IMG/VR virus record: IMGVR_UViG_3300027985_000843
Location: 124,001-188,000 of that record
Length of the DNA stretch: 64,000 bases
Strand: one strand, 5' to 3'
Shown piece by piece: positions 7,148 to 38,199 of the stretch. The notes beneath the pieces were generated by a model, which saw only the letters and a program-made list of their open reading frames with translations, had not been told where the DNA came from and did not search any database. Position 1 is the stretch's first letter, and every line of letters begins with the position of its first letter. The translations under genes were made by a program, and so were the position numbers.

Positions 7148-7423
7148 TCAGGAGCCGTATTGCAGCTTGCGAAGTCTCCGGCGATCCTTGTCGATCTGGT
7201 GTCTCGTTGCATCGATGGCCTTCCGGACAACGTCTGCCATACGCTCGTTGATGGGCAGGGTCTGCTTGAACTTCCATTGAGGACCAGCATCTACAGGTTC
7301 CTCAGCGTCAGGAGCTTGGTCAGCTGATTCAGCGTCTCCGCTGCTGCCGTCGCTCGGTAGTCCTGCGCCCTCTCCTTCTTCGGCAAGATGCCCGTCCTCA
7401 GGTTCGTCCTCGCGTCGATCCAT
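7148..7423 (-). CDS. Small protein (91 aa) whose 5' part overlaps the end of the 2004-aa gene
   Basis: The non-overlapping part (7148-7290) has host-like GC3 codons (WKFKQTLPINERMADVVRKAIDATR). ATG 7423 has GAGGT 4 nt upstream. The start is uncertain (alternative ATG 7240). Confidence 0.55.
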   Translation of the reverse strand: MDRREDEPEDGHLAEEGEGAGLPSDGSSGDAESADQAPDAEEPVDAGPQWKFKQTLPINERMADVVRKAIDATRHQIDKDRRRLRKLQYGS

Positions 7424-10400
7424 GTGTACCTCACGTCATAGAGGCGATCCCCCGACGACATCGCTGCCTCAAGAGTCGCAATATCCCCGGTGCCCGGGTC
7501 GCTCAGCTCGACGATGCGAGCCAGGATGCTGGCCTGTTGGTCGGCCAAGTCCGAATGTGTCGTGCGTCTCCCGAAGGCCGACGCGTCCCACTCCACGGTC
7601 ACTGCCGTCTGGAGAAGGGAGCGGAACGTCTGAAGCCCCGACAAGGCCGCGTCCGCGTGCAGGAGAGCCTGCATCACAGCAGACAGGGTCAGGATGGTCA
7701 CGCCGAAGGCGTCCACGATACGATAGGACACGCTCGGGTTCGTGGCGGGGAAGCCCCCGTCAATGTCGAGGGTTGTCGAGCTGGTGACCGAAGCGATCTT
7801 GTAGATGCCCGCCACGGTGCCCGTCCGGACGAAGACGAAGTGGGTCGAATCAACCCCCGAAGCCGTGAAGTCCACCGATAGGTCAGTCAGCGTCGGCGAG
7901 CCATTCGAGGTAAAGCCGTTCGAGGACACCAGCACATCGGTCAGTACATGCTCTAGGAACCTCTCTAAAGCCTCGATCTGGGCCCAAGGCTTCAGGGGTG
8001 GCGCGTTGGTCGAAAGGACCGCCTCCTGGGCGTCTAGCTCCGCTACGGCCCCATCCAAAAGACTGCCCGTCCCACCGTAGGTGAGAATCGAGTCATCCAC
8101 TCGGTACGACACCGCGCCTGTTGACGAGAAAGCTTCCACCAAAAGTTGCGTGGCCGAGTTGACCGCTGTGACCTGCCGCCTCTCCTGGAGAGCCGGCACC
8201 ACCACCGTGTGCCCCACCTGCACCCCGTTGACGAAGAAGTTGCCGGCCGGATCATCGAGCTGCGTCGTGGTCGTGAGCGTGCCCGCTGAAGACACCAAGG
8301 CAGTGGTTGCAGTCACAACGAAACTGAACCCCGTGTCCTGTAGCGCGAACGGCGTGCTGACCGTGATGTCGCTCACCCCCACCACCGTGATCCGATGGTA
8401 GGAGGTCGGGCCGTTGAGCCCGTTCAAGATTGCCACGAGGTCCCCAGTCCGGGGGGTCGGCACGCCCCACGCCCCGCCAGTGTTCGTGACGATGGTCCTG
8501 GTGACGTCCAAGTCGCCGGTCCCAGCCAAAGCATCTGAAGTTGCCGCTTGGATGGCCGTCAGCTCCGAAGACTGCCGGGTCAGGATACCGATGTCTGGAG
8601 TCACCGACCCGTTCACTGTCTTGCTGAGGCCAAGCTCGGATTCCGGGTCCGGCGTCAGCAACGGAAACTGTCGATTGCCGTCATCGTCGGCCGTGCCACC
8701 GTCAAGGGCCGGGAACCGGTAAGGGCTCGTGATGGTGTTGAACAGGTAGGTGTTGATGTCGATGAACTCTCCCTCTCCTGGAGCCTGAATCTCCAGCTCC
8801 GCCGGGATGGCCGGAAAGCTCCCGTCGAACGGGGGATAGGGCTTGATGTACGTGAGCACGCCGTCGGTCTGATTCACCCCTACGTCGAACCCCACCCGGT
8901 ACGTGTGCAGGAAGGGGCTTGCAGGCGAAGGGGAGAACGTCGCATCATAGTTCGGGATGTGGTAGACCGTCGCCCCCACAGGGATAGTCGTAGGCACAGG
9001 TCCTGAAAGGGTGAGGCTGCTGATTGTCTTCGAGGACAGATTGAGAGCCGGCCCCATGTTGGGCGGGTTGCCGTTGGGGACGATCCACGCGCCGTCACGA
9101 TCTCTGATGACCACGATGGAGTCGGTGGAGGCCGTGTCAGGCCAGGCCGGCCGAAGCAAGTCCTCTTCCTCTTGCGTCGAGTCCACCTGAATGGTTGTCG
9201 AGCCCGCAGGAGCTTCTTGTGTCACGATGGACCACGGAAGCCGGCGGGCCACGCTCTGTACCGAGCTAAGGTTGGTGAACCCTGTCTCGGCAATCGTGTC
9301 CCCTGTCTCTACCCCAGAGACGGCTGGACTGAACAGCCGCCGGTAGGTGGGGTAGAACCGGCTGTAGACCGCCGCCTTGTACGCCTCTCGGTAGGTCCCG
9401 AGCCATGTGTATGCGAACGGGTTGAGCGAAAACTGGAGAGGGGGATCCGCAATCCTCAGAAGGTCATCGATCTGGTTGGTGACCTCGGCGAAGGTGGCCC
9501 TGTCGGGGTTGGTGATGAGCCCGTCGAACAAGAACCGGCCGTCATGGTCGCCGATGACTCGCCCGTCCATTTCCTGGAGGGCGTCTTCGAGGTAGTTGAT
9601 TCCATCATTGAAGTATTTCAGCGTCGGACGAGCCACTTCGTCTTCGTTGTAGAGCCGACCTTCAGTGTAGAAGATAGATTCCCGCCCCTGCTCGTAGAGC
9701 TGGAGTTGGCTCATGTTCTCCAGTCGCGGACCGGCCGTCGGGATGGTCGCTTGAGCGTCTTCTTCGTACTGCTCGACCAACTCCCCTCGGAAGTTGGTGA
9801 ACGTCTCGACCCGGAAGTAGAACGTGTCGGGCAGGTAGGTGGTGTAGTCCGCTTTCAGCAGCTGCCCATTGAGGCCATTGCTGTCTGTCGGGACAATAGA
9901 ATGTGTATAGGAGGCTCGTACCCGCCGACCCGCTTCGATGAGGTTCGTACCTGTGTACAGGACGGCGACCTCTTCCAACTCTTGAAGGGGCGTCGTGAGC
10001 ACGATCTTGCCGCTGTCGTCGATGCTGTAGTCGTCCGGCTGACTGAGAATCACGCCTGCCTGCCCCTCGATCCTTCGGTAGACGAGGAAGGGCTCGCTCA
10101 ACACCGGGCTGTTCGATGTCGTGGCAGTGGTTGCCGACCCGTCGAGGATGGGCCGCTTGGAATACTTGAGCGTAACCGATCCACCGTCGTACTGAGAGAT
10201 ACCATTCGACGTGAGCACGACCTCCGTTCGATTCAAGGTCGCGTCATAGACGGAGCCCGTCACCCGGTTGAAGTCAAGCAGAGTCCCGCCATCCGTGAAC
10301 AAGGTGATGGTACCCGACACGTACGTTCGCGTGACGTCTCCGGGAAGGTAGATGCGGTTCGCCCCTCTTGGGATCGTCGGCCACGAGGACAGCTCTGTGT

Positions 10401-13305
10401 AGAAGTAGGACGGGAAGAATCCCACGGTCGAGGTCCTAACGTCACCGGAAGAGATCTCAACCGACGGGTTGAGGAGGTCGGATCTGAAAACTTGCGGAGA
10501 GGCAAGCACGATGGTGGTCGTGTCGCTGGTTGCGTTGTAGGTCGAAGCTCCGATAAGGTAGATCTCTGAGCTGTCCAGCCGCAGGAGTCGGTTTGACACG
10601 AAGTCCGATGTGCGGTCCCCGATGATCGTGAATTGGGACGCGTCCGCCTCGATATTCACGATGACCCCGAGCATGGGCGGTTGAAGCACCGTCAGGGTCT
10701 TCTCGCCCCCAATGGCCCCGTAGACGTAGTAGTCGATGTAGACGCGCTCGGTGGGCAGCACGTTGTTGCCGTGAGGCAGGGCGTCGGTCACCTGGGTGTC
10801 CGACAAGAAGCGGACGGTGGAAGCCGAGACGTTGAAGGCCACCTTTGCGCTACTCTGAGGACGGCCGCCCCGGAACGCCTCCGGTGCAGGCGTGTCGGCC
10901 ACTTCCCTCCCGAGAGGGTTGAAGTGCAGAAGGTCCGTCACCGTAGGATGGTCTTGCGTGATTTCCTTGCGGACGAGGAAGCGCCCGCGTTCTTGAACGA
11001 GGATCTTCTCATCGTTCTCGTCGAGCACTGCGTACGTGAGGAATACTTCCTCACTCTCAAGCATCCGGTCAGTGAACTCGATAAGGCCGAGAGCTGGCTG
11101 CAATGCGTAGTCGGTCCCGAGCACAAGCGTGCGGGCCGAGTAGACGCTGAGCCCCGCAGTGATGTCCGCCTGACTGAAGTTGACCTCGCCCGTATCCTGT
11201 GCGATCTCGACTTCGCCCGCAGCCAAGAGGACGGGGGCCGTGAAAGCGCCCGCGTTGGCGACCACTGTGACAGACGTCGAGAAGGTTGACGTGCCGAAGC
11301 GGAATCGGTAGCTGCCCACGTAGGACACGTCAACGAACAGGCCCGAGGCCGTCGTGCCCATGTTGATCAGACGCTCGACCACCGTATTGGGGTCCACATC
11401 GGACACGTTCCGGAAGTAGCGGTCTGCAAGGATCTCGCTGGATCGACGGACCTCGTAGACAAGATTCGATTCCACGCCTCCGCTGATGTCCACCGTCAGC
11501 GAAGTCGTGCCCACGGTAGCGATCGTGTACACCCCTTGGGCCGTCCCAGAAGTGACGATGAGCAGGTCCCCGGGAAGCACTCCGGCCGCAGTGAAGTTCT
11601 GGCTGGTATCGGTGAAAGACGTGCCCGAGAAGGCGCCCGACCCGCTCGCGTACAGAACGCCCTGCGTGTCCGCAAACGTGATGAGGCCGCTTGTGTAGTC
11701 AAATAAGGCAGTCTCTCCGAGAACCAACTCGGTCCACCCCACCGTCGAAGGATAGACCGCCCCGCCCCCGACCACATCCTCCAGCTCCAACGTGAGCCGC
11801 TGCTCGAACACCAAAGGATTGGGGAGTTGAAGAGCCCCAAACGGGCCGGCCACCCGAAGACGGAAATTGTCCGCCCCCGAAGCCGACACAAGCTGCCCAT
11901 TGTGTCGCTGAGCGTAGTTGAGCACTCCCGAATCCGGGTCGAGAAGGTAGCCGTAGCCTGAGGGCGGCGAGAGCACGTCGAGGTTCGACAGGATGCCTGG
12001 GGGGTAGGTACCTGTCCCCTGAGCAACTCGGATCTCGATCGTCCGGCCTTCCACGGGAATCGCTGGGAGGGTGACCGACGGAGCCCCGATGATGGGATCC
12101 GCCCACGAGGCATCCTCCGTCGAGTGAAAGGCCGCGACATCCAATGTTGTGGGGTCGGAAGCTGTCAGGTCGACAGGCGTCCGAAACATCCGGAGCGTCA
12201 TTCCTCGTTCGATGTCGAGATCGGCCACGATCGCCTGGACATTCTCCGAGCCGTAGGACGACTGGTCAGCGGCGGAGAATCGGACGGCACCCGTTCCTCT
12301 GTTGACCTCCACCACGCCCCTCTTGCCCAACGCACTGAAGGAGTCGACGTACTTCGTCTCCTCGAACTGTACTACCCCCGGCACTCGGAAGAACAGATCG
12401 CTGTCTTCCGGCGGTACGGGGCTGAGAATCCCAGGAGCACTCACCGTCCCGAAGGCCGCAGCGAACACCGTTGCACCGAAGGCGAACGTCGAGCCGTCGT
12501 AGTAGACGGACTCCCCGGCATATGTCACTGCATCGGTGGCATTGAACCGCAGCTCTCCAGTGGCCCGGTCCCACTCAACAGTGCCCACTGCCGGGGTTCC
12601 AAGAGCTACAACCTCGACTGGCGTCAAGTATTCCTGGAACCCGATCCGAATGAGCGGGAACTGTCCCGATCTCGGTAGAGGGTTGAGCAGTAGCGTGTCC
12701 TCAATGGCTCCGAGCTTGCCGCTAGAGTCATCTCGCGTGTAGAAGCTCTGCCGCTGGAACCGCACGGCCTGGGCATCGTAAGTGACGAGGTCCGTGGGGC
12801 TCCACCCCATGCTCCCTGACTCTTGAGAGATCTGGACGCTGCCCACCGGAGGGTCGGGGCTGTTCAGATCGACGTCCAGAGCCACCAGGACGACCGTGAA
12901 GGACGTTCCAGCCCCTGACCCTACCGAGACCCTCACCGGGTACGTGACGAGGTCTGAGGAGGCAGGGATTGCGACTACGAGCCGGTTCGTGTTGGAGTCG
13001 GCACCGAGCACACCAGGCTCGTCCAAAACCGACCCTGGCAACATGCGGAACCTCTGCTGTCGGCCATCGTAGTCGAACCGGTTGATGACCTCGTTCTTGG
13101 TCCAGCAGAAGGTACAGTCGGGGAAGTCCCCGTCCTCAAGGACGAAGACATGGTACTCCGTCCTCGGAGCCGACTCGTCCGACGGGTAGTAGAAGTCGAA
13201 CGTCGTCTGATTCGAGATGTACACGTTCGGCGTCTGTGTAAACGCACTATTCGCCGCACCTACGCGAGGGGGGTCGACAATGTATCCTGTTATTGACAGG
13301 GGCAT
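7291..13305 (-). CDS. Giant (2004 aa) baseplate/tail structural protein with repeated beta modules
   Basis: Long open frame, Thr/Ser/Gly/Val-rich. About four copies of a module like TD....F...GV..GD...V..G...G.Y.I..V. Helical C-terminus. Lies between the spike and gp25/J genes. Confidence 0.85.
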   Translation of the reverse strand: MPLSITGYIVDPPRVGAANSAFTQTPNVYISNQTTFDFYYPSDESAPRTEYHVFVLEDGDFPDCTFCWTKNEVINRFDYDGRQQRFRMLPGSVLDEPGVLGADSNTNRLVVAIPASSDLVTYPVRVSVGSGAGTSFTVVLVALDVDLNSPDPPVGSVQISQESGSMGWSPTDLVTYDAQAVRFQRQSFYTRDDSSGKLGAIEDTLLLNPLPRSGQFPLIRIGFQEYLTPVEVVALGTPAVGTVEWDRATGELRFNATDAVTYAGESVYYDGSTFAFGATVFAAAFGTVSAPGILSPVPPEDSDLFFRVPGVVQFEETKYVDSFSALGKRGVVEVNRGTGAVRFSAADQSSYGSENVQAIVADLDIERGMTLRMFRTPVDLTASDPTTLDVAAFHSTEDASWADPIIGAPSVTLPAIPVEGRTIEIRVAQGTGTYPPGILSNLDVLSPPSGYGYLLDPDSGVLNYAQRHNGQLVSASGADNFRLRVAGPFGALQLPNPLVFEQRLTLELEDVVGGGAVYPSTVGWTELVLGETALFDYTSGLITFADTQGVLYASGSGAFSGTSFTDTSQNFTAAGVLPGDLLIVTSGTAQGVYTIATVGTTSLTVDISGGVESNLVYEVRRSSEILADRYFRNVSDVDPNTVVERLINMGTTASGLFVDVSYVGSYRFRFGTSTFSTSVTVVANAGAFTAPVLLAAGEVEIAQDTGEVNFSQADITAGLSVYSARTLVLGTDYALQPALGLIEFTDRMLESEEVFLTYAVLDENDEKILVQERGRFLVRKEITQDHPTVTDLLHFNPLGREVADTPAPEAFRGGRPQSSAKVAFNVSASTVRFLSDTQVTDALPHGNNVLPTERVYIDYYVYGAIGGEKTLTVLQPPMLGVIVNIEADASQFTIIGDRTSDFVSNRLLRLDSSEIYLIGASTYNATSDTTTIVLASPQVFRSDLLNPSVEISSGDVRTSTVGFFPSYFYTELSSWPTIPRGANRIYLPGDVTRTYVSGTITLFTDGGTLLDFNRVTGSVYDATLNRTEVVLTSNGISQYDGGSVTLKYSKRPILDGSATTATTSNSPVLSEPFLVYRRIEGQAGVILSQPDDYSIDDSGKIVLTTPLQELEEVAVLYTGTNLIEAGRRVRASYTHSIVPTDSNGLNGQLLKADYTTYLPDTFYFRVETFTNFRGELVEQYEEDAQATIPTAGPRLENMSQLQLYEQGRESIFYTEGRLYNEDEVARPTLKYFNDGINYLEDALQEMDGRVIGDHDGRFLFDGLITNPDRATFAEVTNQIDDLLRIADPPLQFSLNPFAYTWLGTYREAYKAAVYSRFYPTYRRLFSPAVSGVETGDTIAETGFTNLSSVQSVARRLPWSIVTQEAPAGSTTIQVDSTQEEEDLLRPAWPDTASTDSIVVIRDRDGAWIVPNGNPPNMGPALNLSSKTISSLTLSGPVPTTIPVGATVYHIPNYDATFSPSPASPFLHTYRVGFDVGVNQTDGVLTYIKPYPPFDGSFPAIPAELEIQAPGEGEFIDINTYLFNTITSPYRFPALDGGTADDDGNRQFPLLTPDPESELGLSKTVNGSVTPDIGILTRQSSELTAIQAATSDALAGTGDLDVTRTIVTNTGGAWGVPTPRTGDLVAILNGLNGPTSYHRITVVGVSDITVSTPFALQDTGFSFVVTATTALVSSAGTLTTTTQLDDPAGNFFVNGVQVGHTVVVPALQERRQVTAVNSATQLLVEAFSSTGAVSYRVDDSILTYGGTGSLLDGAVAELDAQEAVLSTNAPPLKPWAQIEALERFLEHVLTDVLVSSNGFTSNGSPTLTDLSVDFTASGVDSTHFVFVRTGTVAGIYKIASVTSSTTLDIDGGFPATNPSVSYRIVDAFGVTILTLSAVMQALLHADAALSGLQTFRSLLQTAVTVEWDASAFGRRTTHSDLADQQASILARIVELSDPGTGDIATLEAAMSSGDRLYDVRYTWIDARTNLRTGILPKKERAQDYRATAAAETLNQLTKLLTLRNL

Positions 13306-13315
13306 CAGGACACCC

Positions 13316-13534
13316 TCACCTCTTGTGCCGCCACCGGATGTTCAAGCCTTTTCTGTTGACAGGGCAGGGGCCTGTTCCAGTCAGATAGGCAATCCGACCA
13401 TCTTCAAGGGAGACCTCCACACAGAAGCCGAAGCCGTTAGGAACAGGTTCCAGATCGGGAGGGGTTACATCCGGATTTGTCCGTAGGGGTCGGTGCTCTC
13501 GGATGTCGATCACCGTAGCTATATTTGCTTTCAT
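13316..13534 (-). CDS. Hypothetical 72-aa protein
   Basis: Fills the gap between two structural genes; ATG 13534 with GGAG 7 nt upstream. Confidence 0.55.
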   Translation of the reverse strand: MKANIATVIDIREHRPLRTNPDVTPPDLEPVPNGFGFCVEVSLEDGRIAYLTGTGPCPVNRKGLNIRWRHKR

Positions 13535-13549
13535 CTTCAATCTCCATCT

Positions 13550-14122
13550 TCATAGGATTTTCCCGGTTCCCGTTCCAGCTCCGCCGGTAGGGGAGGCCGT
13601 TCCTACAATGACAATCGGGATAGCAAGACTCGCGAAAACGGAGTCGAGTGCCAGACCGATTGCGCCAGCAAGACGGGGCATAGCCTCGCCAACAAGCCCA
13701 GCTGCTGTGAAACCTGCGATCATGGGCCCTGCACAGGAGGGGGCCAGGAACTTCGCAACCCCAGTTCCCGAACCGATCACAGGATGGGTCGTCGTCACGA
13801 GCATCTGAAGGAAAGCCAGGGACATTCCATTGGACAAGCCTGTCACGAACAGGGGCATCATGACACCAACAATGCCAGCTGCTGGGACTGTACCCATGAG
13901 AGCAGCGAACAGAACAGGTTGGGGAATGGGTAGGGGTAGGGGAACATTGGTACCCACCCCCAAGGACCCGGTGTCCGTAGTCGTGACTTGGACAAGGGGG
14001 ATCCACTGCTGCAAACCATTGGCAACCCCGAGGGCGATTCGGGGGGAGTCCGTGCCCACCATGCCCACTGCGAGCAAGTTGGGGGCAATGACCCCTGTCA
14101 TGGATGGGATGGCGACAGGCAT
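13550..14122 (-). CDS. Gly/Ala-rich three-repeat protein, putative spike-tip protein
   Basis: 190 aa directly downstream of the spike gene. Three ~62-aa repeats (AVGMVG...P / AAGIVG...P / AAGLVG...P). Confidence 0.6.
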   Translation of the reverse strand: MPVAIPSMTGVIAPNLLAVGMVGTDSPRIALGVANGLQQWIPLVQVTTTDTGSLGVGTNVPLPLPIPQPVLFAALMGTVPAAGIVGVMMPLFVTGLSNGMSLAFLQMLVTTTHPVIGSGTGVAKFLAPSCAGPMIAGFTAAGLVGEAMPRLAGAIGLALDSVFASLAIPIVIVGTASPTGGAGTGTGKIL

Positions 14123-14123
14123 C

Positions 14124-16316
14124 TCAGCTCGACAACACTACCGCAGCACCCAGCAAGGGTGTACCGGTGATGGGATCCAGGGTTGGGGCGTTCGGGGGCA
14201 TAGAGGGGATGCCACGAGCCACACCAAGCACCCCGGGGGTAGCTGCCCCTCCCAGGTTGATGATGGCCGCAAGGGTGCTTGCAGCGGCGCCAGCGGTGAG
14301 ATTCAGTGCGAGCCCCGCAGTCAATGCCATGGCGCCGGCACCGGCCGCAGCGGACCACGCCCCCGCCCCGGTAGACAGCGTCACGGCTCCAGCCCCCGTC
14401 GTGGCCGCCAAAGCTCCCGTGCCCACGGCAATGCTGAAGGCACCGGCGGGGTTGAGGAACGAGGTAGCTCCTGCCGCAACGTTGTAAGTCATGGCACCGG
14501 CCAGCACGTTGGTGATCTGCGCCCCCGCGAGGATGGTTGAGATCTTGCCACCCGCCACGATGTTCTCCAGCACCTGGAGGGCGTAATTGAGCTGCGACTT
14601 ACCAGCGATCAGCTGGTTCATCTCGCCCGCATTGAGAGTGTAGCCCGAGTGAGAGTTGATCTCCGTCCGGTCCGCCTCCATGCGATTGAGGCCGTTGACG
14701 AACGTAATCTTTGAACCCGAGATGCTCTTCTGCTCGGCACCCGTGATGGATGTCTTCTTGATACCCTTGACTTCCACCGCGAGGGCGGCGTCTTCCTCAT
14801 TGGGGTTGCCGGTGAAGGTTTGCCGTACGGCACCACGGAAGTTCGTGGTGATGACGTTGCCTTCGGCATCTCGCCCGATGTCGAGGTGCAAGCCACCCGC
14901 AAGTGTGAGGTGGGCCGAGATGCGGTCAGGAGTTGAAGCCCCGATGAATGCCTTGAGGGCACCGGCCAAGTTGGCTTCGACCGACACATGGTTCGTACCG
15001 CTCGCATAGGCTTCCGACCCTGAGGCCGGGACGTTGATGAGAGCCTTGCCCTCCTTGGTCACAGCCACCACGAAGTGGTTGTCCCCACGAGACTTCGGAG
15101 GGCGGATCCTGAACAGGAATGCTCCCGCCGTCGTGTCAGTCTCCTCCGCCCCTACACGGTCAACCTCGTCGAGCTGGAACTTGCCCGGGCCGTGAGTCGT
15201 GAACTCAGGGAATAGACGAGGGGTCAGAATCTTCCCATACTGTCGCTGACCTCTGGAAGAGGTCAGGTCGTTGCCGATGATCGTGCCGTACACACGTTCG
15301 ATGTAGGGAGGCCGCCTGTCCACGGAGAAGCCGTCGACCTGCTCAAGAACTTCTTGTGTTAGGTCCGACGTGTGCGACAGCTCCAAGCGGTGCTCTACGA
15401 GAGCGTCGGCCGGGCTGTCAGGGTCCTCCAAGCTCAGGTCGGGCCGTAGGGATGGCGGGTAGTGGACCTGCTTGCCATTCGAGTAGACAACGACAGGAAA
15501 CTCTCGGGTGTCGTTGAACAACGAGTTGAGATTGCCATCCGTGTCGGCGAACTTGTAGGGCTCCCCCTCATTGCCAGGGCCGGCAGCTTGCAGCTCGTCA
15601 CGTCCGAAGTAGTTGTCCAGGTCGTAGTAGTCTTCGGTGACTTCCTTGAGCGTGCCGTCACCCTTGAGGATGTCGGGGGGCAGGAAGAAAGCGCTGCGTC
15701 GAGCAGGACCGGAAAAGAACCGAACACCGCTCTCTGTCTGCACTCGGTGAATGGCCTGTGCGACGAGAGTCCTCTCGGCGTCTCGAAGCTCGATCAGGTC
15801 CCCCGCCCGGTTGGTCATTGCCACGTCCTTCGACAGGACGAACTCAGCCCCATCAGAGGACATGCCGCCGACGTTGCCAGGTTTCATCAGCAGTCGCTTG
15901 TATCGGACCGTGGGGCCAACCAGCTCTCTGTAGATGGCCTCGTCCCCGTCTGCGACCTCCCCCGGGCTCGCTGCTGCGAAGGGGTCGAACCTCAGGCCAC
16001 TGCGGTTGCCCGTGGGGATGAAGCCAAGGATGACAGCCTCATTGAGATTCTTGTGGATCTTCCGGAATCCAAGGACGCAGATCGAATTGACCTCCGGCAC
16101 ACCACCCCAGAAGGAACGAGGGCCCGCCATCGCCTGGGCGATGTCCACCTCCAGCCGCCAACCGCCACCAGTGAGAATCTTGACGTCGGCCTTCATGTTG
16201 ATCTCGTCAACACGGGTGACTAGGCCGATGCGAGTTCCCTCGACCTTGGTGGGATCGAAGAATTCCGACTTCGGAACGGACCCAACAGGCCGCTTCGGTA
16301 CGTTGTTGAAATTCAT
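14124..16316 (-). CDS. Central baseplate spike (gp5/gpV/VgrG-like)
   Basis: 730 aa. N-terminal OB-fold-like GLVTRVD...V....G...P.V...VLGF. C-terminal Gly/Ala/Thr beta-helix-like repeats (AGA.T..V.AGA). Follows the hub gene. Confidence 0.8.
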   Translation of the reverse strand: MNFNNVPKRPVGSVPKSEFFDPTKVEGTRIGLVTRVDEINMKADVKILTGGGWRLEVDIAQAMAGPRSFWGGVPEVNSICVLGFRKIHKNLNEAVILGFIPTGNRSGLRFDPFAAASPGEVADGDEAIYRELVGPTVRYKRLLMKPGNVGGMSSDGAEFVLSKDVAMTNRAGDLIELRDAERTLVAQAIHRVQTESGVRFFSGPARRSAFFLPPDILKGDGTLKEVTEDYYDLDNYFGRDELQAAGPGNEGEPYKFADTDGNLNSLFNDTREFPVVVYSNGKQVHYPPSLRPDLSLEDPDSPADALVEHRLELSHTSDLTQEVLEQVDGFSVDRRPPYIERVYGTIIGNDLTSSRGQRQYGKILTPRLFPEFTTHGPGKFQLDEVDRVGAEETDTTAGAFLFRIRPPKSRGDNHFVVAVTKEGKALINVPASGSEAYASGTNHVSVEANLAGALKAFIGASTPDRISAHLTLAGGLHLDIGRDAEGNVITTNFRGAVRQTFTGNPNEEDAALAVEVKGIKKTSITGAEQKSISGSKITFVNGLNRMEADRTEINSHSGYTLNAGEMNQLIAGKSQLNYALQVLENIVAGGKISTILAGAQITNVLAGAMTYNVAAGATSFLNPAGAFSIAVGTGALAATTGAGAVTLSTGAGAWSAAAGAGAMALTAGLALNLTAGAAASTLAAIINLGGAATPGVLGVARGIPSMPPNAPTLDPITGTPLLGAAVVLSS

Positions 16317-31073: not shown

Positions 31074-32060
31074 CTAGTTGGCGACGGGACCGTAAAAGGC
31101 GTCGGCGTCATCCTCTGCGATGTCGCCCCACTCGGCCAGCTCTTCGGAGGCTGACCGCCTTCGAGACTGTTGCCACGCTCGCAGAGAGTCGTCGAAGACC
31201 TTGATGATCTCGGCGGCCTGCTCCTGTGTGAAGCGTCGTCGGAAGTCGTCCGGCCCGTTGGGCATGGGACCAAACTTTCGGTCGAGGTTGTGCTTCTGCC
31301 AGAGCCACGCCTTGCCACTCAGGTGGTACTTGAGACGCTCGATCTGAGCATCTGTTGGACCTCCTCCAGGATTCTGTTGTGGCCTCGGAGCAGGTTGCTG
31401 GCTCCGCTGGTCGTTCTGGATTCGGTCGTGCTCGGCACGAGCTTCGAACTCAGTCAACGCATCCCTGAGATGCGTGATGAGCCGAGAAGCTGATCCATCG
31501 CGACCACCATCGAGCATCGAGAAGTCTTTGGGCTCGGTGCTACCGTCGAGCCCAAAGTCCTTCCAGTGGATCTGACCTTGCAGCTTCCGCTGGAACACCA
31601 TGGATACCAGCTTCTGGATGAACTCCATTTGCTTGGGAGAAGGACCACTCGCCGCAGGAGCTACTCCTTCGGCCCTCTTCTCCCAGTAGTCCTCGCTGTC
31701 TTCGTAGATGTCGATGAGCTTGTCGACACGATCGTCAAGAGCCGATCGCCAGTTCTTGGTGCGCATCACAAGCACAATTCCGTGCTTCTTCTGCGTGGCC
31801 TTGGTCATCAGGTATTCGCCCTTACCCTTGACCTTCAGGCTGACCAGGAAGACCTCGATGGCATCGTCCCCTACCCCACGAACCTCTTCACGTCCAATGG
31901 ACAGGGAGGTGTGAATGCGAACCCCAACATTGGGTCCGACCTGGAGGGTGTAAGTCAGCTGGTTGCCGATCCGGCCCGGCTTCGGACGGTATGGACGGTA
32001 GGAGTTCATGACGAACTTCTCCATCTCATCCTTGGAGATCTCGACGTACCGATCAGCCAT
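31074..32060 (-). CDS. Hypothetical, possibly nucleic-acid-binding protein with two P[ST]xxQ helical repeats
   Basis: ATG 32060 overlaps the helicase stop, SD GAGGGAG. N-domain R.VG.DAI.V...RT.NWR; repeats GPSPKQMEFIQKL and GPTDAQIERLKYHL. Confidence 0.8.
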   Translation of the reverse strand: MADRYVEISKDEMEKFVMNSYRPYRPKPGRIGNQLTYTLQVGPNVGVRIHTSLSIGREEVRGVGDDAIEVFLVSLKVKGKGEYLMTKATQKKHGIVLVMRTKNWRSALDDRVDKLIDIYEDSEDYWEKRAEGVAPAASGPSPKQMEFIQKLVSMVFQRKLQGQIHWKDFGLDGSTEPKDFSMLDGGRDGSASRLITHLRDALTEFEARAEHDRIQNDQRSQQPAPRPQQNPGGGPTDAQIERLKYHLSGKAWLWQKHNLDRKFGPMPNGPDDFRRRFTQEQAAEIIKVFDDSLRAWQQSRRRSASEELAEWGDIAEDDADAFYGPVAN

Positions 32061-35000
32061 TGTCCACTCCCTCATTCCACCGAATCGAAGCCTCGACCAA
32101 GTCCTCTTCGGTCATGTCGTCCTCAGAGGGGTCGGCGCCCCACCAGATGGATGCGTCAGCAGCTGTCTTGGAGGTCACGCCGTCGACCGCTGCCGCAGCT
32201 TCGCCCGCCACACCTGCCGGGTTGACGTTCTCTCCTGGTGCCAAGCCCGCTTCCAACACGAACCGACTGATACCCGAAGGCTTGTTGTTCAACCTCTTCG
32301 GGCAGATGATCGTGAGGTTCTTCTCAGCACGAGTGATGGCAACATACCCAAGACGCCGTTCGTCTTCGAGTTGCTTCTGTTCCTTCTCGGGCGGAGGCGG
32401 GGGCTCGTCTGGTTTCGTGAACAGAGGCATGGGGAACTTGCTGTCCGGCATGGGGACGTAGACGTTCTTCCACTCCAGACCCTTCGTGCTGTGCACTGTG
32501 TTCAGGGACATGAAGTCCGAAGGCCCCTCAGGGAGGACCTCACCACGCTTGAGGGCCGCCTTGCGCTCCTCCTCTGTCGGGACTCGCAGGCTCTTGGCCC
32601 GATCTTCGTAGCGAAGCATCTTGGCGGCAAACCCTGCCGGCGTGTTGGGGTTCTGGGCCACGTCACCAGGATCCGTTGGATCGACTTCCGTGAGAAGATA
32701 CAGGAAGGACACGTTGCCCAAACCAAGTTCGGACGCGTTGACGTCTCCCACGGCTTCCTTGTCAACATTGTCTTCGTCGGTCGAGTTCCGGAGGTCCCCT
32801 TCGATGTTCTCACGAAGAGAAATCGACTTCCATTCGGAGCGGCCTGTTTCCTCGTTGATGGTAGGGACCTCACTGCGGATGTCCAGGATGGCACCGAACA
32901 AGTCCTTGGTGGTGGTCTCTTCCTTGTCAGCGTTGGCCTGAATCTCCATGAGTTCATCACGAAGGGCCTCGATCTTGCGCATGGCCGGCTTGATGCCGTT
33001 GTGGCTCTTGGCAAGCCTGCTCGCCAACATCTCGACGAAGACTCCGTCCCTGAGCGCCTTGATGGGGCTGATGGCACTCACATCCTCCCCCTTGCGACGG
33101 GCATACTCCCGGAAGACCCCCTTGACGATGTCAGGGCCTTCTTTGCCACGGAAGAAGCGCAGGGGTGAATCGATGACGTTGCCGAAGGACTCCTGCATCC
33201 TTTCGTAGTCGCTGCCCATGATCAGGTCGACGTACCCGAGCACAGCCTTCGCCTCTGAAGACTCCAAGAACCCCTTCCCGCCCTTTCGTTGGTAGGGGAC
33301 ACCTCGAACGATGCATGCTGTCTCGTAGGAATTCAGTTCGGCGTTGGTGCGGGTGAGAACAGCATGATTCTTGAACTCGTCACCATCGGGCCGATCCACT
33401 GCCGCCTTGACCCGATCGATCACGGAGATGGCTGCCGCTGCCTCGTCCACGGGAAGTTCGACTCGGATGGAGGCGTTGCCCGACTGACGTGCCGGGTTGG
33501 CGTTGGCCTCCATCGGAATCTGATCCTCGTTGTTGGCGATGAGCTTGTTGGCTGCCGTGATGATCTCAGGCTCGCACCGGTAGTTGGTTCGGATCATCCG
33601 AACCGTAAACTCCTCGTTCGTAGCCAGGGCAATGAACAGGTCAGGTCGAGCCCCACGGAAGCCGTAGATCGACTGCTTGTCGTCTCCCACCATCCACAGG
33701 GACCGACCATCCTTGCCGTCACCCACCTGTTCCGTGATGTAGCCGATGACCTCGTGCTGGATCGTGTTCATGTCCTGGCACTCGTCGACGATGACGTGGT
33801 CGAGTCCAGACTGAATCTTCTTCCTCGCGGCAGGGTTCCGGCGGAGAATGTCCCGAGCGATCGAGAGCTGATCATCGAAGTCGCCGGCTGGAACCAAGCG
33901 AGAGCGGTTGTTGTACTGAACAGTTCGGACAGACGCGAGGAAGGCTTCCCATTGAGTGGTTCGCCTGTTGGACGGAGGCCGACGTCCCCACTGCCTGGCC
34001 TTCTGGACATTCTCCTGGTGCTCTTCCTCGATCGCCTCTCGTTGGCGCTCTTCGCAAGGAGGTTCCCAGTTCTTGCCATTGGACGTCTTGAACTGGTTGT
34101 ACCATTCGTACCAGCGGGCTGCGAGGGCCTCTTCCTCGTTCTCAGCGATCTCTGCCGCCTTCTGCGGAGAAATGTCATTGCCCGCCCAAAGGCTCTTGTA
34201 CAACATCATGGTGCTGAGCGGTGGCACGTTTTCCTTGCCGTAGCAGGCGCCCCACACCTTGTTGACCCACCGACCAATCTTGCTGCCGTCTCCCGTGAAG
34301 GCGGCCTCTACTGCCATCTGTTCGTCTTCGTTGCCGAAGTCCTTGATGACTCGCAAGAAGGTCGAGTGCAGTGTGCCGAGCTTGCCCGACGCGTCCATGC
34401 GTTTGACCACGTCCTCACCAAGCGTGGGCTTGAGACGTTCTGCCAGCTCCTTGCCCGCCTTCTTGTTGAAGGTCGTGGCGAGGATCCTCGTGGGCGCCAC
34501 CCCCCGATCCAGGACCAAGTGGGAGATTCGAGCCACGGCCGTCCGTGTCTTGCCCGAACCGGCCGACGCTGCCACGAGCACCTTGCCGTCTGTGAGAGCA
34601 GCCGCTCGTTGCTCATCGTCGAGCCCCTTGAGGGTCTGGGGGATGTTCTGTGGGTTGGAAAGGTCGGTTACGGCCGTCAGAGCGGCCGCTGTTGCGATTC
34701 CCACCACCTCGGACTTCTTCGGGGGCACGTCGGGCTCCCCGCTCGCTTCTAGGGCCTTCTGAGCCTTGGCAGTGGCCTCTTGCTCTACGATGGCAACAGT
34801 TTCAGCCCGAGCAGCCTTGGCTTCCTGAATCTCCTCAGGGTCGACAGCCGCGAGCTGTCGAGCTTGCTGGGCCACGAGAGTGCTGGCCTGATCAGTCACC
34901 TCGCTCGCACCCACTTCCACGGGAGACACGAACTCGGGGAAGAATTCGTCCGCACGAAGGGGCCTCGCCACCTCGTCTGCCCAGTCAATCCACTTGCGGA

Positions 35001-35652
35001 TGAGGGCGTGCTTCACGGGAATGGCTGCGAGCTTCTTGAGGGCGGCATCCCCGTCATCCATCTGGACGGCGGCGAAGGCTTCCTGCACTTGGTTGCGGAG
35101 CTTGATCTTGTTCCCGAACACACCCTTGAGCGTCTTCGGGCCGCCGCGCGTCACCACGCCGCGAAGGTCCCGGGCTCGAACCGCCATACTCTGAGGGCTT
35201 CGAGCAGGCTTGCGCATCGCCCGGTCCAGCTTGGTGTGATACTGCTCCGGCAAGTGTTCACGCATGAAGTCGGTGAACTGGGCCATCTCTGAGTCGAGGC
35301 GCCGCATCAGTCGGACACCCGCCTGGACAACCTTGTCTACGGGATTCTCTCGGTTCTGTTCGAGCTTGACGAGTTGCTCATCGATGTCAGCAACCTGATC
35401 GTAGTCCAGCTCTCCCGCACCATTGTCCACAACGGACATCAGGGCTTCCCGACGTTCCGTCAGGGTCTGGATCTTGAACTGGATGGTGCTCTCCAAGTGC
35501 CTAGAGTACACATCAAAAGCTTGAACGAAGATCAGGTACTCGGAAGCCTGGTATGCCTCCAACGGCTCCGCTTCCCCCTCCTCCATGGCAGCTAGATGCT
35601 GCGTGAAGTCTTCGACTGCTGCCCGGAGTTCTTGCTGTTGCTGTGCATCCAT
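32053..35652 (-). CDS. uvrD: UvrD/Rep/PcrA-family SF1A helicase with ~340-aa N-terminal extension
   Basis: All motifs present: LDDEQ, ASAGSGKT, TTFNKKA, TLHS, VDECQD, VGDDKQSIYGFRGA, NYRC, TVHSTKGLEW, EDERRLGYVAITRA. Start either ATG 35652 or TTG 35673. Confidence 0.95.
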   Translation of the reverse strand: MDAQQQQELRAAVEDFTQHLAAMEEGEAEPLEAYQASEYLIFVQAFDVYSRHLESTIQFKIQTLTERREALMSVVDNGAGELDYDQVADIDEQLVKLEQNRENPVDKVVQAGVRLMRRLDSEMAQFTDFMREHLPEQYHTKLDRAMRKPARSPQSMAVRARDLRGVVTRGGPKTLKGVFGNKIKLRNQVQEAFAAVQMDDGDAALKKLAAIPVKHALIRKWIDWADEVARPLRADEFFPEFVSPVEVGASEVTDQASTLVAQQARQLAAVDPEEIQEAKAARAETVAIVEQEATAKAQKALEASGEPDVPPKKSEVVGIATAAALTAVTDLSNPQNIPQTLKGLDDEQRAAALTDGKVLVAASAGSGKTRTAVARISHLVLDRGVAPTRILATTFNKKAGKELAERLKPTLGEDVVKRMDASGKLGTLHSTFLRVIKDFGNEDEQMAVEAAFTGDGSKIGRWVNKVWGACYGKENVPPLSTMMLYKSLWAGNDISPQKAAEIAENEEEALAARWYEWYNQFKTSNGKNWEPPCEERQREAIEEEHQENVQKARQWGRRPPSNRRTTQWEAFLASVRTVQYNNRSRLVPAGDFDDQLSIARDILRRNPAARKKIQSGLDHVIVDECQDMNTIQHEVIGYITEQVGDGKDGRSLWMVGDDKQSIYGFRGARPDLFIALATNEEFTVRMIRTNYRCEPEIITAANKLIANNEDQIPMEANANPARQSGNASIRVELPVDEAAAAISVIDRVKAAVDRPDGDEFKNHAVLTRTNAELNSYETACIVRGVPYQRKGGKGFLESSEAKAVLGYVDLIMGSDYERMQESFGNVIDSPLRFFRGKEGPDIVKGVFREYARRKGEDVSAISPIKALRDGVFVEMLASRLAKSHNGIKPAMRKIEALRDELMEIQANADKEETTTKDLFGAILDIRSEVPTINEETGRSEWKSISLRENIEGDLRNSTDEDNVDKEAVGDVNASELGLGNVSFLYLLTEVDPTDPGDVAQNPNTPAGFAAKMLRYEDRAKSLRVPTEEERKAALKRGEVLPEGPSDFMSLNTVHSTKGLEWKNVYVPMPDSKFPMPLFTKPDEPPPPPEKEQKQLEDERRLGYVAITRAEKNLTIICPKRLNNKPSGISRFVLEAGLAPGENVNPAGVAGEAAAAVDGVTSKTAADASIWWGADPSEDDMTEEDLVEASIRWNEGVDNG

Positions 35653-35699
35653 CTTACCGACTCTCGGAGACAAGTAGAAACGCTATACCAGCACGTAAC

Positions 35700-36906: not shown

Positions 36907-38199
36907 TTACACGGGAAGCACATCCAGCAGCCGGTGCCTAAGGTACTCGGGATCTGTGTAAGGTTCGTCCTCACGGATCACCAAAAGGTGATAGCGACCA
37001 TCGTCGACAACTTGTCGAGCCTTCTCAGCGTCCCGTTCAACCATGGCATCGAACAGGATACGATCTTGGATGTAGACGCTCGGGAATGTCCAGTGCTGGT
37101 AGCCGTGAAACTCGACGATGAGGTTGTGGCTAGGGAAGAACCCGTCGAAGCGGAAGCGGTGCCCTGTCTTGGGGTTCGTGAACTTCCGGGGGCTCCACTC
37201 CATCTCGTAAGGGGTTCCTAGAACGTCCTTGACAGCCTCCAAACATAGAATCTGACGCAGAGCGTGCACCCTGACAGGCAATCCGAGTCGCACGCATTCC
37301 TTGCGGATCGTGGTTGCTGTATGGCCCAAGCCTCGCATGGCGTGTGCAAGAACCACCCTGCCATTAACCTGACGGTAGGGCTCAAGTTGCTCCGCCGTGA
37401 GTACAACCCGTGTGACTTCGGCTGACTTGCGGCTCATCTCGTGAAACCTGCCATCAGCCTTGTCCCGCTCAACACGGGCACCCACATACTTGGTCGAAAG
37501 CCGAAGCCCCAAAGACTCCATGTAGGCCGTGATAGTGGGTTCACAAAACCCAAGCTCTTCCGCCATGGCACGCCGATCCACAGCCCCGGTAGCGTCTAGG
37601 AACGGTGTGAAATCCACCTGGGATAAGTCCGCCTTGAGTCCATTCGTACAGGGACCGCCCGTCTTAAGGGCCGACAGCTTCTCAGCCGTGCTACGAAGGC
37701 TCGGATGGTCGCCTTTCGTGAGCCCCTTGCTCCACGACTTTCGGCCCTTCATCCCAGCCGCAGCACGGGCAACACGCTCGTCCGTCTCCTTGGTCAAGCC
37801 TCGGTTCCACCCCGCACTGGCCGACATTTTCGCCCGCGTCTCAGCAGACAGCTTCCGGCCCTTGAGTGGTGATGGCTTGCGGACCTTCGGTTTGGAAGCC
37901 TTGTCCCTTGCCTTGCAAGCAGGGCAACGAAGGTCTTTCGAGGCGGATGTGGCCGCTACCTCATGAACAACTCCACAAGGGCACGTGACCGCCTTCCTGA
38001 GCCCCTTGCGGGGCTTCTCAGCATGGGCCTTAGAGATAGCAGCACGTCGGTTCGACTCACAGACTTCCGACCGAATACGAGCCTCGGGAAACTGCTCTCG
38101 GTACGCATCCGCCGTGATGCCGTGTGCTGCCTTGAGGTGCCTTGCAAGGGTTTGGGCTTGGTGCCCGCAGATGAGGCAGGAGACTAGGGTTTCCAGCAT
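36907..38199 (-). mobile_element. Free-standing homing-type endonuclease: MucR-like Zn finger + NUMOD3 + PD-(D/E)XK (Vsr/DUF559-like) domain
   Basis: CLICG....L..HL...HG.T...YR..FP; KGRKLSAETRAKMS; two W.KGLTK repeats; FRFDGF......VEFHGYQHW. Inserted just downstream of the sheath gene. Confidence 0.8.

What the first reader, a model, noticed from the sequence alone, without database searches (positions are those of the whole stretch)
13550..14122. Non-PAAR pseudo-threefold protein in the spike-tip position
It has three ~62-aa internal repeats: LAVGMVGTDSPRIALGVANGL / PAAGIVGVMMPLFVTGLSNGM / TAAGLVGEAMPRLAGAIGLAL, each ending in a G.GT-type turn. PAAR/gp5.4 tips are known monomers with threefold pseudo-symmetry that cap trimeric spikes. 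This gene starts 2 nt after the spike stop but lacks PAAR motifs and metal-binding His/Cys clusters, and is hydrophobic. It may be an independent, membrane-piercing tip design.
Basis: partly seen in the sequence, partly recalled or inferred. Interest (0 to 1): 0.6.

Follow-up and report, generated by a model that had tools for sequence, protein, structure and literature searches.

The report
Apolar three-repeat cap for phage spike
A small, almost charge-free protein made of three tandem copies of one module, encoded right after the tail spike of an uncultured 372-kb phage, most likely sits as a single cap on the end of the three-chain spike, doing the job PAAR proteins do elsewhere with an unrelated fold.

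Summary
Window 13550..14122 (-) encodes a 190-aa protein with three ~62-aa repeats (z 6-7.6 against shuffles; repeat profiles match at 97.6-98.3%). It is the most apolar protein in the window (GRAVY 0.97, 4% charged) and has no PAAR motif or His/Cys cluster. It belongs to an unnamed family with 345 cluster representatives, nearly all ~190 aa, from huge-phage contigs.

AlphaFold2 (pLDDT 90) gives three helix-helix-hairpin units. This is not a PAAR cone, and no solved fold matches it.

The upstream 730-aa protein is a gp5/gpV-type spike: an OB fold, a beta-helix, and an apolar C-terminus with no His.

A model of three spike C-termini plus one copy passes its controls (0.62 against 0.00). The same loop of each repeat contacts the LDPITGT segment of one spike chain.

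Neither this phage record nor a related one contains PAAR or PAAR-like genes.

Two caveats. The neighbour kept in every lineage examined is the downstream ~2000-aa protein, not the spike. Membrane action is an inference.

Verdict: probably a new, non-PAAR spike-tip family, supported by computation only.

The parts
13550..14122 (-). Gene for the 190-aa three-repeat apolar protein (P0001), the proposed spike cap. The stop codon is 13550-13552.
   Evidence: ORF; family of 345 representatives; AF2 model with pLDDT 90.1 and pTM 0.83.
13937..14122 (-). Repeat 1 (aa 1-62): helix 5-18, loop with invariant G23, helix 25-43, hairpin 45-59.
   Evidence: Predicted spike contacts are residues 20-26 and 28-29.
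13751..13936 (-). Repeat 2 (aa 63-124): helix 68-78, loop with invariant G86, helix 89-105, hairpin 108-126.
   Evidence: Predicted spike contacts are residues 83-89 and 91-92.
13553..13750 (-). Repeat 3 (aa 125-190): helix 131-140, loop with G145 (92% conserved), helix 148-165, hairpin 167-189.
   Evidence: Predicted spike contacts are residues 142-148 and 150-151.
14124..16316 (-). Central spike gene (730 aa): N-terminal OB fold, middle domain, C-terminal beta-helix.
   Evidence: phrog_694 'baseplate hub and tail lysozyme', E 7.7e-5, over residues 521-687. Some homologues carry PF10106/DUF2345. OB-fold matches at probability 0.96-1.0 and P2 gpV 3qr8 at rank 24. There are more than 356 homologues on contigs up to 659 kb.
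14127..14576 (-). Apolar, nearly charge-free distal part of the spike (aa 581-730): GRAVY 0.92, 4 charged residues, no His or Cys, so no HxH iron apex.
14160..14180 (-). Spike residues 713-719 (LDPITGT), the predicted docking segment for the cap. L713 is invariant and T717 is 98% conserved in 45 spikes. The motif is kept as LDPLTG in a spike only 25% identical.
7291..13305 (-). Gene for a 2004-aa protein of unknown fold. It is the most persistent neighbour of the cap gene across lineages. It may be a baseplate component that contacts or shields the tip (inference).
   Evidence: No family match.

Best explanation
[quoted passage not shown] It arose by triplication of a ~62-aa helix-loop-helix-hairpin module. 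One chain therefore presents three equivalent faces to the three spike chains, which is how PAAR and T4 gp5.4 resolve the 3:1 symmetry mismatch. In the model, the Gly-containing loop between the two helices of each repeat grips the conserved LDP(I/L)TG segment near the C-terminus of one spike chain. The cap and the last ~150 residues of each spike chain are almost free of charge, so the piercing end is an apolar needle. Inferred, not shown: this apolar end eases entry into or through the host membrane(s) and then comes off to unplug the tube. Also inferred: before firing it is shielded inside the baseplate, perhaps by the ~2000-aa protein whose gene always lies beside it.
For: The internal threefold repeat is robust. 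The AF2 model is confident and is 3 x (helix, helix, hairpin). [quoted passage not shown] The last 170 residues of the spike have no His, so there is no HxH iron apex. [quoted passage not shown] The spike stop and cap start are 1 nt apart, and no promoter-like or terminator-like site lies between them. The order spike-cap-giant is kept in 10 of 10 close loci and in L022 and L023. It parallels the order gp5 - tip gene - gp6 - gp7 in T4-like phages (PMC12407873). Complex prediction: score 0.62, best of 3 controls 0.00. That mark was reached by 58 of 80 solved complexes and 2 of 110 mismatched pairs. The runs agree in at least 94% of contacts and the partner's pLDDT is at least 72. Contacts are spike 713-719 of all three copies, and cap residues 20-29, 83-92 and 142-151, which are the same loop in each repeat. 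That loop holds the family-invariant G23 and G86, and G145 at 92%. No PAAR, DUF4150 or DUF4280 gene is found in the 372-kb record. No PAAR is found in the related 485-kb phage LR745208, which does have both a family member and a spike with the LDPLTG motif. The cap's composition matches the distal spike: GRAVY 0.97 and 0.92, with 4.2% and 2.7% charged residues, against 12-31% for the other proteins in the window.
Against: All evidence is computational. The phage is uncultured and no RNA or protein data were found. In at least four lineages the gene is not next to a spike but stays next to the giant-protein homologue (L009/L010, L007/L008, L021, L006). In LR745208 it lies 245 kb from the spike and 3 kb from the giant homologue. 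Taken as a whole, the predicted interface columns are no more conserved than the rest of the protein (entropy 2.48 against 2.38). The complex job differed from the tool's calibration, because it used my own alignments and three copies of one chain, so the pass rate applies only roughly. The own record is estimated 78% complete, so a PAAR gene could lie in the missing part. I had no model coordinates, so the threefold arrangement is inferred from the contact pattern and the secondary structure.
Confidence: 0.55

Rival explanations
1. The protein is a partner of the downstream ~2000-aa protein, either an assembly chaperone or a small structural subunit bound to it in the baseplate. Its position after the spike in this clade would then reflect only module order.
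For: Wherever the flank could be read, the giant-protein homologue lies within 3 kb of the gene. This includes lineages where no spike is nearby.
Against: This does not explain the pseudo-threefold build, or the specific symmetric docking on the spike trimer with zero-scoring controls, or the composition shared with the distal spike. In T4-like phages the tip gene also sits directly upstream of the wedge genes, so linkage to a baseplate gene is compatible with a tip role.
Confidence: 0.2
2. It is an integral membrane protein that acts in the host membrane, for example a holin-like, pore-forming or exclusion protein, and is not a virion part.
For: Very high hydropathy is conserved across the family (median GRAVY 0.83, median 8 charged residues). 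Two 19-residue windows exceed Kyte-Doolittle 2.0. The weak structural neighbours are membrane transporters (Z 4.8 or less).
Against: No holin or membrane family matches in Pfam, PHROGs or NCBIfam. The predicted helices are 10-19 residues long and alternate with conserved Gly-rich hairpins in a compact, confident fold. The hydrophobic segments have no flanking positive charges and there is no signal peptide-like N-terminus. The gene sits inside a baseplate operon with no lysis genes beside it. Z 4.8 is below the level the tool itself calls meaningful.
Confidence: 0.1
3. It forms a homo-oligomer or a lumen plug elsewhere on the tail axis, for example inside the hub or tube, rather than at the distal end of the spike.
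For: Threefold pseudo-symmetry would suit any position on the tail axis. Its apolar nature would suit a buried location.
Against: The only interface tested, the spike C-terminus, passed with equivalent contacts on all three chains. There is no evidence for another site.
Confidence: 0.08

Closest known systems
PAAR-repeat spike tips (Pfam PF05488; T6SS PAAR such as PDB 4JIV; T4 gp5.4)
   Same: Both are a single chain with internal threefold pseudo-symmetry, encoded next to the spike gene, and predicted to sit on the blunt C-terminal end of the trimeric beta-helix at one copy per trimer.
   Different: No sequence or profile match. The fold is alpha/beta (3 x helix-helix-hairpin) and not an all-beta cone. 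It is about twice the size. It has no Zn-binding His/Cys and is far more apolar. PAAR does not appear among the top 50 structural matches shown, which stop at Z 2.8.
PAAR-like PIPY domains (DUF4150, PF13665), hydrophobic T6SS tips that need the DUF2169 chaperone (PMC11883445)
   Same: Both are non-PAAR-motif tips with a hydrophobic surface. For PIPY domains that surface was proposed to aid membrane penetration and to need shielding before firing. That precedent supports both the apolar-tip idea and the idea of a shielding partner.
   Different: PIPY keeps the PAAR-like conical fold. There is no HMM match here or anywhere in the phage record. There is no DUF2169-like neighbour.
Iron-binding apex domain of P2 gpV / phi92 gp138-type spikes (HxH motif)
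   Same: It has the same role of sharpening the spike end. P2 gpV is a weak structural match to the upstream spike.
   Different: The apex is fused to the spike and holds Fe through three HxH motifs. This spike has no His in its last 170 residues, and the cap is a separate gene.
RB43 orf205w, a ~690-aa candidate non-PAAR tip of a T4-like phage (PMC12407873)
   Same: It is a precedent for a spike tip that is not PAAR, encoded between gene 5 and gene 6, with an alpha/beta N-terminal part.
   Different: It is unrelated in sequence (hhalign probability 0.5%). It is 3.6 times longer, and I saw no three-repeat pattern in its sequence.

Membership tests
PAAR (PF05488) / T4 gp5.4 | Match to the PAAR_motif profile, i.e. 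PAAR repeats | tested here: not met
   No Pfam hit at E<=1 for P0001. PF05488 is not among the top 25 of 27 families listed for the 88 family members. 'PAAG' at residues 80-83 is not conserved.
PAAR (PF05488) / T4 gp5.4 | All-beta conical fold | tested here: not met
   The AF2 model has six helices and three hairpins. No PAAR or gp5.4 chain appears in the rows shown by Foldseek or VIA-align.
PAAR (PF05488) / T4 gp5.4 | Metal site formed by His/Cys near the vertex | tested here: not met
   The protein has 1 His and 1 Cys. Family medians are 1 and 1, and neither residue is an invariant column.
PAAR (PF05488) / T4 gp5.4 | [quoted passage not shown] | tested here: met
   In silico only. Score 0.62 against 0.00 for the best control, with equivalent loops of the three repeats on residues 713-719 of the three spike chains.
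PAAR-like DUF4150 (PIPY) and DUF4280 | Match to PF13665 or PF14107 | tested here: not met
   No Pfam hit. Neither family is found in the own record. The DUF4280 control genomes also gave nothing, so that absence is weak.
Fe-apex spikes (P2 gpV type) | HxH motif near the spike C-terminus | tested here: not met
   No His in spike residues 561-730, and none in the consensus C-terminus of 45 homologues.
Central spike (T4 gp5 / P2 gpV / VgrG C-terminal part), for the upstream 730-aa protein | N-terminal OB fold plus C-terminal trimeric beta-helix | tested here: met
   OB-fold matches at probability 0.96-1.0 and gpV 3qr8 at rank 24. phrog_694 beta-helix match, E 7.7e-5. PF10106 on homologues. The trimer of residues 561-730 was modelled at pLDDT 91-92. 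The monomer model itself is poor (pLDDT 58).
Holins / phage membrane proteins | Match to a known holin or membrane family, or transmembrane helices of at least 20 residues with flanking positive charges | tested here: not met
   No family match. Predicted helices are 10-19 residues. The protein has only 4 basic residues. No dedicated transmembrane predictor was available.
RB43 orf205w-like tips | Sequence or profile similarity | tested here: not met
   hhalign probability 0.5%.

The most novel reading that the evidence does not exclude
Huge phages carry a second, evolutionarily independent class of spike tip. It is an alpha/beta, triplicated, charge-free cap that, together with an equally apolar distal spike, works by partitioning into lipid rather than by acting as a rigid metal-stabilised point. 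It is kept shielded in the baseplate by the giant protein encoded beside it, in the way DUF2169 shields PIPY tips in T6SS.
Probability: 0.3. Interest if true: 0.75.

Novelty: new variant of a known kind. Interest (0 to 1): 0.62.

Why it matters
Spike tips are among the most conserved parts of contractile injection machines, and most known ones are PAAR-type (PMC12407873). A separate fold doing the same 3:1 capping job would be a case of convergence on pseudo-threefold symmetry. It is present in hundreds of huge-phage lineages that lack PAAR. It would also name a previously anonymous conserved gene in huge phages. Finally, it would offer a natural, nearly charge-free needle end for testing whether tip hydrophobicity matters for crossing membranes, a question raised for T6SS PIPY tips but still open.

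Tried and rejected
- tblastn of P0001 against 50,697 phage records found no match. The member in LR745208 was found only with a profile.
- A profile of the family against PDB sequences gave only a chance hit, PmbA at E 0.81.
- Foldseek against PDB and BFVD found nothing at E<=0.001. VIA-align wide gave a best Z of 4.8 to Na+/H+ antiporters, which I treat as noise under the tool's own guidance.
- In Pfam, DUF3842 matched 3 of 88 members (best E 3.8e-07), too few members to define the family. I judge it a compositional match; this was not tested.
- RB43 orf205w, tested as a possible relative, is unrelated.
- The test of whether predicted interface columns are more conserved than the rest was negative.
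- The AF2 monomer model of the spike is poor (pLDDT 58), so only its OB domain was informative.
- The identity of the 2004-aa protein stayed open. Nothing came from Pfam, PHROGs, NCBIfam, PDB sequences, the ESM Atlas or BLAST against RB43 gp5-gp10.
- The search for related loci with the wide alignment A3 failed for lack of a conserved stretch, as did A1 on genome contigs. P0001 alone found nothing in the genome collection.
- The 74-aa ORF between the cap and giant genes is not conserved, so I did not count it as a part.
- The 295-aa family member P0193 looks like a mis-called start, with 'MPV...' at residue 112, and not a fusion.
- No RNA runs were found. Read laying was not used, because the holders are contigs of the probable source sample.
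- No alternative genetic code was used.

Full report
**Where we are.** The window is bases 124001-188000 of a 371,739-bp IMG/VR virus record, estimated 78% complete. GC content is about 60%. The only runs that hold this DNA are a hydrothermal-vent metagenome and an unlabelled metagenome, which are probably its source. All long genes lie on the minus strand.

The genes around the finding form a baseplate module:
- A 643-aa, a 1189-aa and a 730-aa protein lie upstream.
- Then comes the 190-aa protein of the finding.
- A non-conserved 74-aa ORF and a 2004-aa protein follow.
- Next are proteins of 746, 256, 379 and 984 aa. The 379-aa protein has a weak gp25-like match and the 984-aa protein matches a 'tail protein' family.

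**The observation.** The ORF at 13550..14122 (-) encodes 190 aa. Its ATG lies one base after the TGA of the 730-aa gene. The three thirds align with z = 6.0-7.6 against 1000 shuffles. In 88 diverse family members, the repeat profiles match each other at 97.6-98.3% hhalign probability.

The protein has GRAVY 0.97 and 8 charged residues, with one His and one Cys. It is the most apolar protein in the window by a wide margin: 4.2% charged, against 12-31% for the others.

**A real and sizeable family.** A word-based search found 15 homologues of 183-192 aa. No Pfam, PHROGs or NCBIfam model fits, so I ran the exhaustive profile search. It gave 345 representatives at E<=1e-3 and 195 at E<=1e-10. Of the best 150, 130 are 183-200 aa long and align end to end.

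Apolarity is a family trait: median GRAVY is 0.83 and the median number of charged residues is 8. No Cys or His is conserved. The invariant columns are glycines. One lies in the loop between the two helices of each repeat (G23, G86; G145 at 92%). Several lie in the hairpins (G52/55/57, G117/119/121, G174/183/185/187). The ESM Atlas holds several unnamed, mostly viral clusters of the same size and shape, with TM-scores up to 0.82.

**Fold.** With the 15-sequence alignment, AlphaFold2 gives pLDDT 90.1 and pTM 0.83. The model has three units, each consisting of a helix, a helix and a beta-hairpin. This is not the all-beta PAAR cone.

Foldseek found nothing in the PDB or BFVD at E<=0.001. The exhaustive VIA-align search peaked at Z 4.8 on membrane antiporters, which is below the level the tool regards as meaningful. 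I had no coordinates. The threefold arrangement is therefore inferred from the repeat pattern and from the contacts described below.

**The upstream protein is a spike.** Several lines agree:
- Residues 521-687 match the beta-helix end of phrog_694, 'baseplate hub and tail lysozyme' (E 7.7e-5).
- Some of its more than 356 homologues carry PF10106/DUF2345, the VgrG-associated domain. These homologues lie on contigs up to 659 kb.
- The monomer model is poor (pLDDT 58), but its N-terminal domain matches OB folds at probability 0.96-1.0. P2 gpV appears at rank 24.

The spike's last 150 residues have GRAVY 0.92, only 4 charged residues and no His or Cys. It therefore has no HxH iron apex. [quoted passage not shown]

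Yet the record holds no PAAR, DUF4150 or DUF4280. The 485-kb phage LR745208 also holds no PAAR, although it has both a related spike and a family member.

**Docking test.** I modelled three copies of spike residues 561-730 (45-row alignment) with one copy of the 190-aa protein (15 rows). The scores were 0.62, 0.62 and 0.59, and the best of 3 controls scored 0.00. That mark was reached by 58 of 80 solved complexes and by 2 of 110 mismatched pairs. The runs agree in at least 94% of their contacts, and the partner's pLDDT is at least 72. The tool warns that these counts apply only roughly, because I used my own alignments and the job held three copies of one chain.

The contact pattern is the informative part. 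Spike residues 713-719 (LDPITGT) of all three copies touch the cap. On the cap, the contacts are residues 20-29, 83-92 and 142-151, which are the same helix-helix loop in each repeat. Each spike chain lies between two neighbouring repeats in cyclic order. In the spike, L713 is invariant and T717 is 98% conserved. The motif survives as LDPLTG in the LR745208 spike at 25% overall identity, and as LDYITG and LDTLTG in two other lineages.

One caution applies. Apart from the glycines, the cap's interface columns are no more conserved than the rest of the protein.

**Gene neighbourhood.** In the window's clade the order 1189-aa protein, spike, cap, giant protein holds in 10 of 10 loci. One locus has a methyltransferase-like insertion between the spike and the cap. 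Two more distant members (L022, L023) also follow a spike.

Other lineages differ:
- In L009/L010, L007/L008 and L021 there is no spike upstream, but the gene is directly followed by the giant-protein homologue.
- In L006 the two genes are adjacent and divergently transcribed.
- In LR745208 the gene lies 245 kb from the spike and 3 kb from the giant homologue.

So the most persistent neighbour is the ~1500-2100-aa protein, whose function I could not determine. This does not contradict a tip role. In T4-like phages the tip gene lies between gene 5 and the wedge genes 6 and 7 (PMC12407873). It does keep a rival reading alive, in which the protein is a partner of the giant protein. It also suggests that the giant protein may contact or shield the tip.

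**Mechanism proposed.**
- Shown by computation: a triplicated module, a confident alpha/beta fold, specific symmetric docking on the spike end, and an apolar composition shared with the distal spike.
- Inferred: the cap completes an apolar needle that enters lipid more readily, then leaves with or from the spike to open the tube.
- Inferred: the apolar end is buried in the baseplate before firing. Hydrophobic T6SS PIPY tips, which need a DUF2169 shield, are a precedent for both ideas (PMC11883445).

**Comparison and novelty.** In function the closest known kind is the PAAR/gp5.4 tip. Membership fails on every sequence and fold criterion and is met only for the mode of binding. The RB43 candidate tip orf205w is unrelated. 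I found no paper describing this family. I rate it a new variant of a known kind. My confidence in the cap role is 0.55.

**Limits.** There is no experimental evidence of any kind. The record is incomplete. There was only one complex job. I had no access to model coordinates.

Noticed in passing
window 7291..13305 (-): A 2004-aa protein with no family or structure match. It has a recurring N-terminus (MP.I.T.FI..PRV in distant lineages) and a conserved C-terminal RY.W.D.RTN motif. Its homologue lies within 3 kb of the cap gene in every lineage examined, including those where the spike gene is elsewhere.
   Followed up: partly
window 14127..14576 (-), spike aa 581-730: The distal beta-helix of the spike is almost pure Ala/Gly/Thr/Leu, with 4 charged residues in 150. 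This is not a trait of the rest of the spike, whose other segments are 21-28% charged.
   Followed up: partly
window 13316..13540 (-): A 74-aa ORF fills the 245-nt gap between the cap and giant genes. Related loci have gaps of 4-392 nt. Five of the nine checked hold ORFs of 45-122 aa that are unrelated to each other, so this is a variable slot and not a conserved gene.
   Followed up: yes
L014:8851-9949: In one related 301-kb phage contig, a 255-aa DNA-methyltransferase-like gene (it has a DPPY motif) and a 122-aa ORF are inserted between the spike and the cap genes.
   Followed up: no
L002:8425-9198 (LR745208.1): In the 485-kb phage, the gene after the spike is a 257-aa protein that looks by eye like a peptidoglycan amidase and is not a cap. 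The cap homologue lies 245 kb away. Next to it is an ORF with an HNH-like Cys/His pattern, and an SNF2-type helicase lies further on. Both identifications are by eye and untested.
   Followed up: partly
window 32053..35673 (-), 36907..38199 (-), 38264..42559 (-): Upstream of the tail module lie three further genes: a 1206-aa helicase (phrog_1967, E 3.9e-82), a 430-aa protein with an HNH endonuclease domain, and a 1431-aa protein of unknown function in the most GC-rich stretch of the window (64%).
   Followed up: no
window 13916..13942 (-), cap aa 61-69: The linker between repeats 1 and 2 is proline-rich (VPLPLPIPQP, with P63 and P67 conserved in the close clade). It recalls the P(I/V)P(Y/F) patch of T6SS PIPY tips. 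It is not conserved across the wider family, so I do not read it as the same motif.
   Followed up: partly
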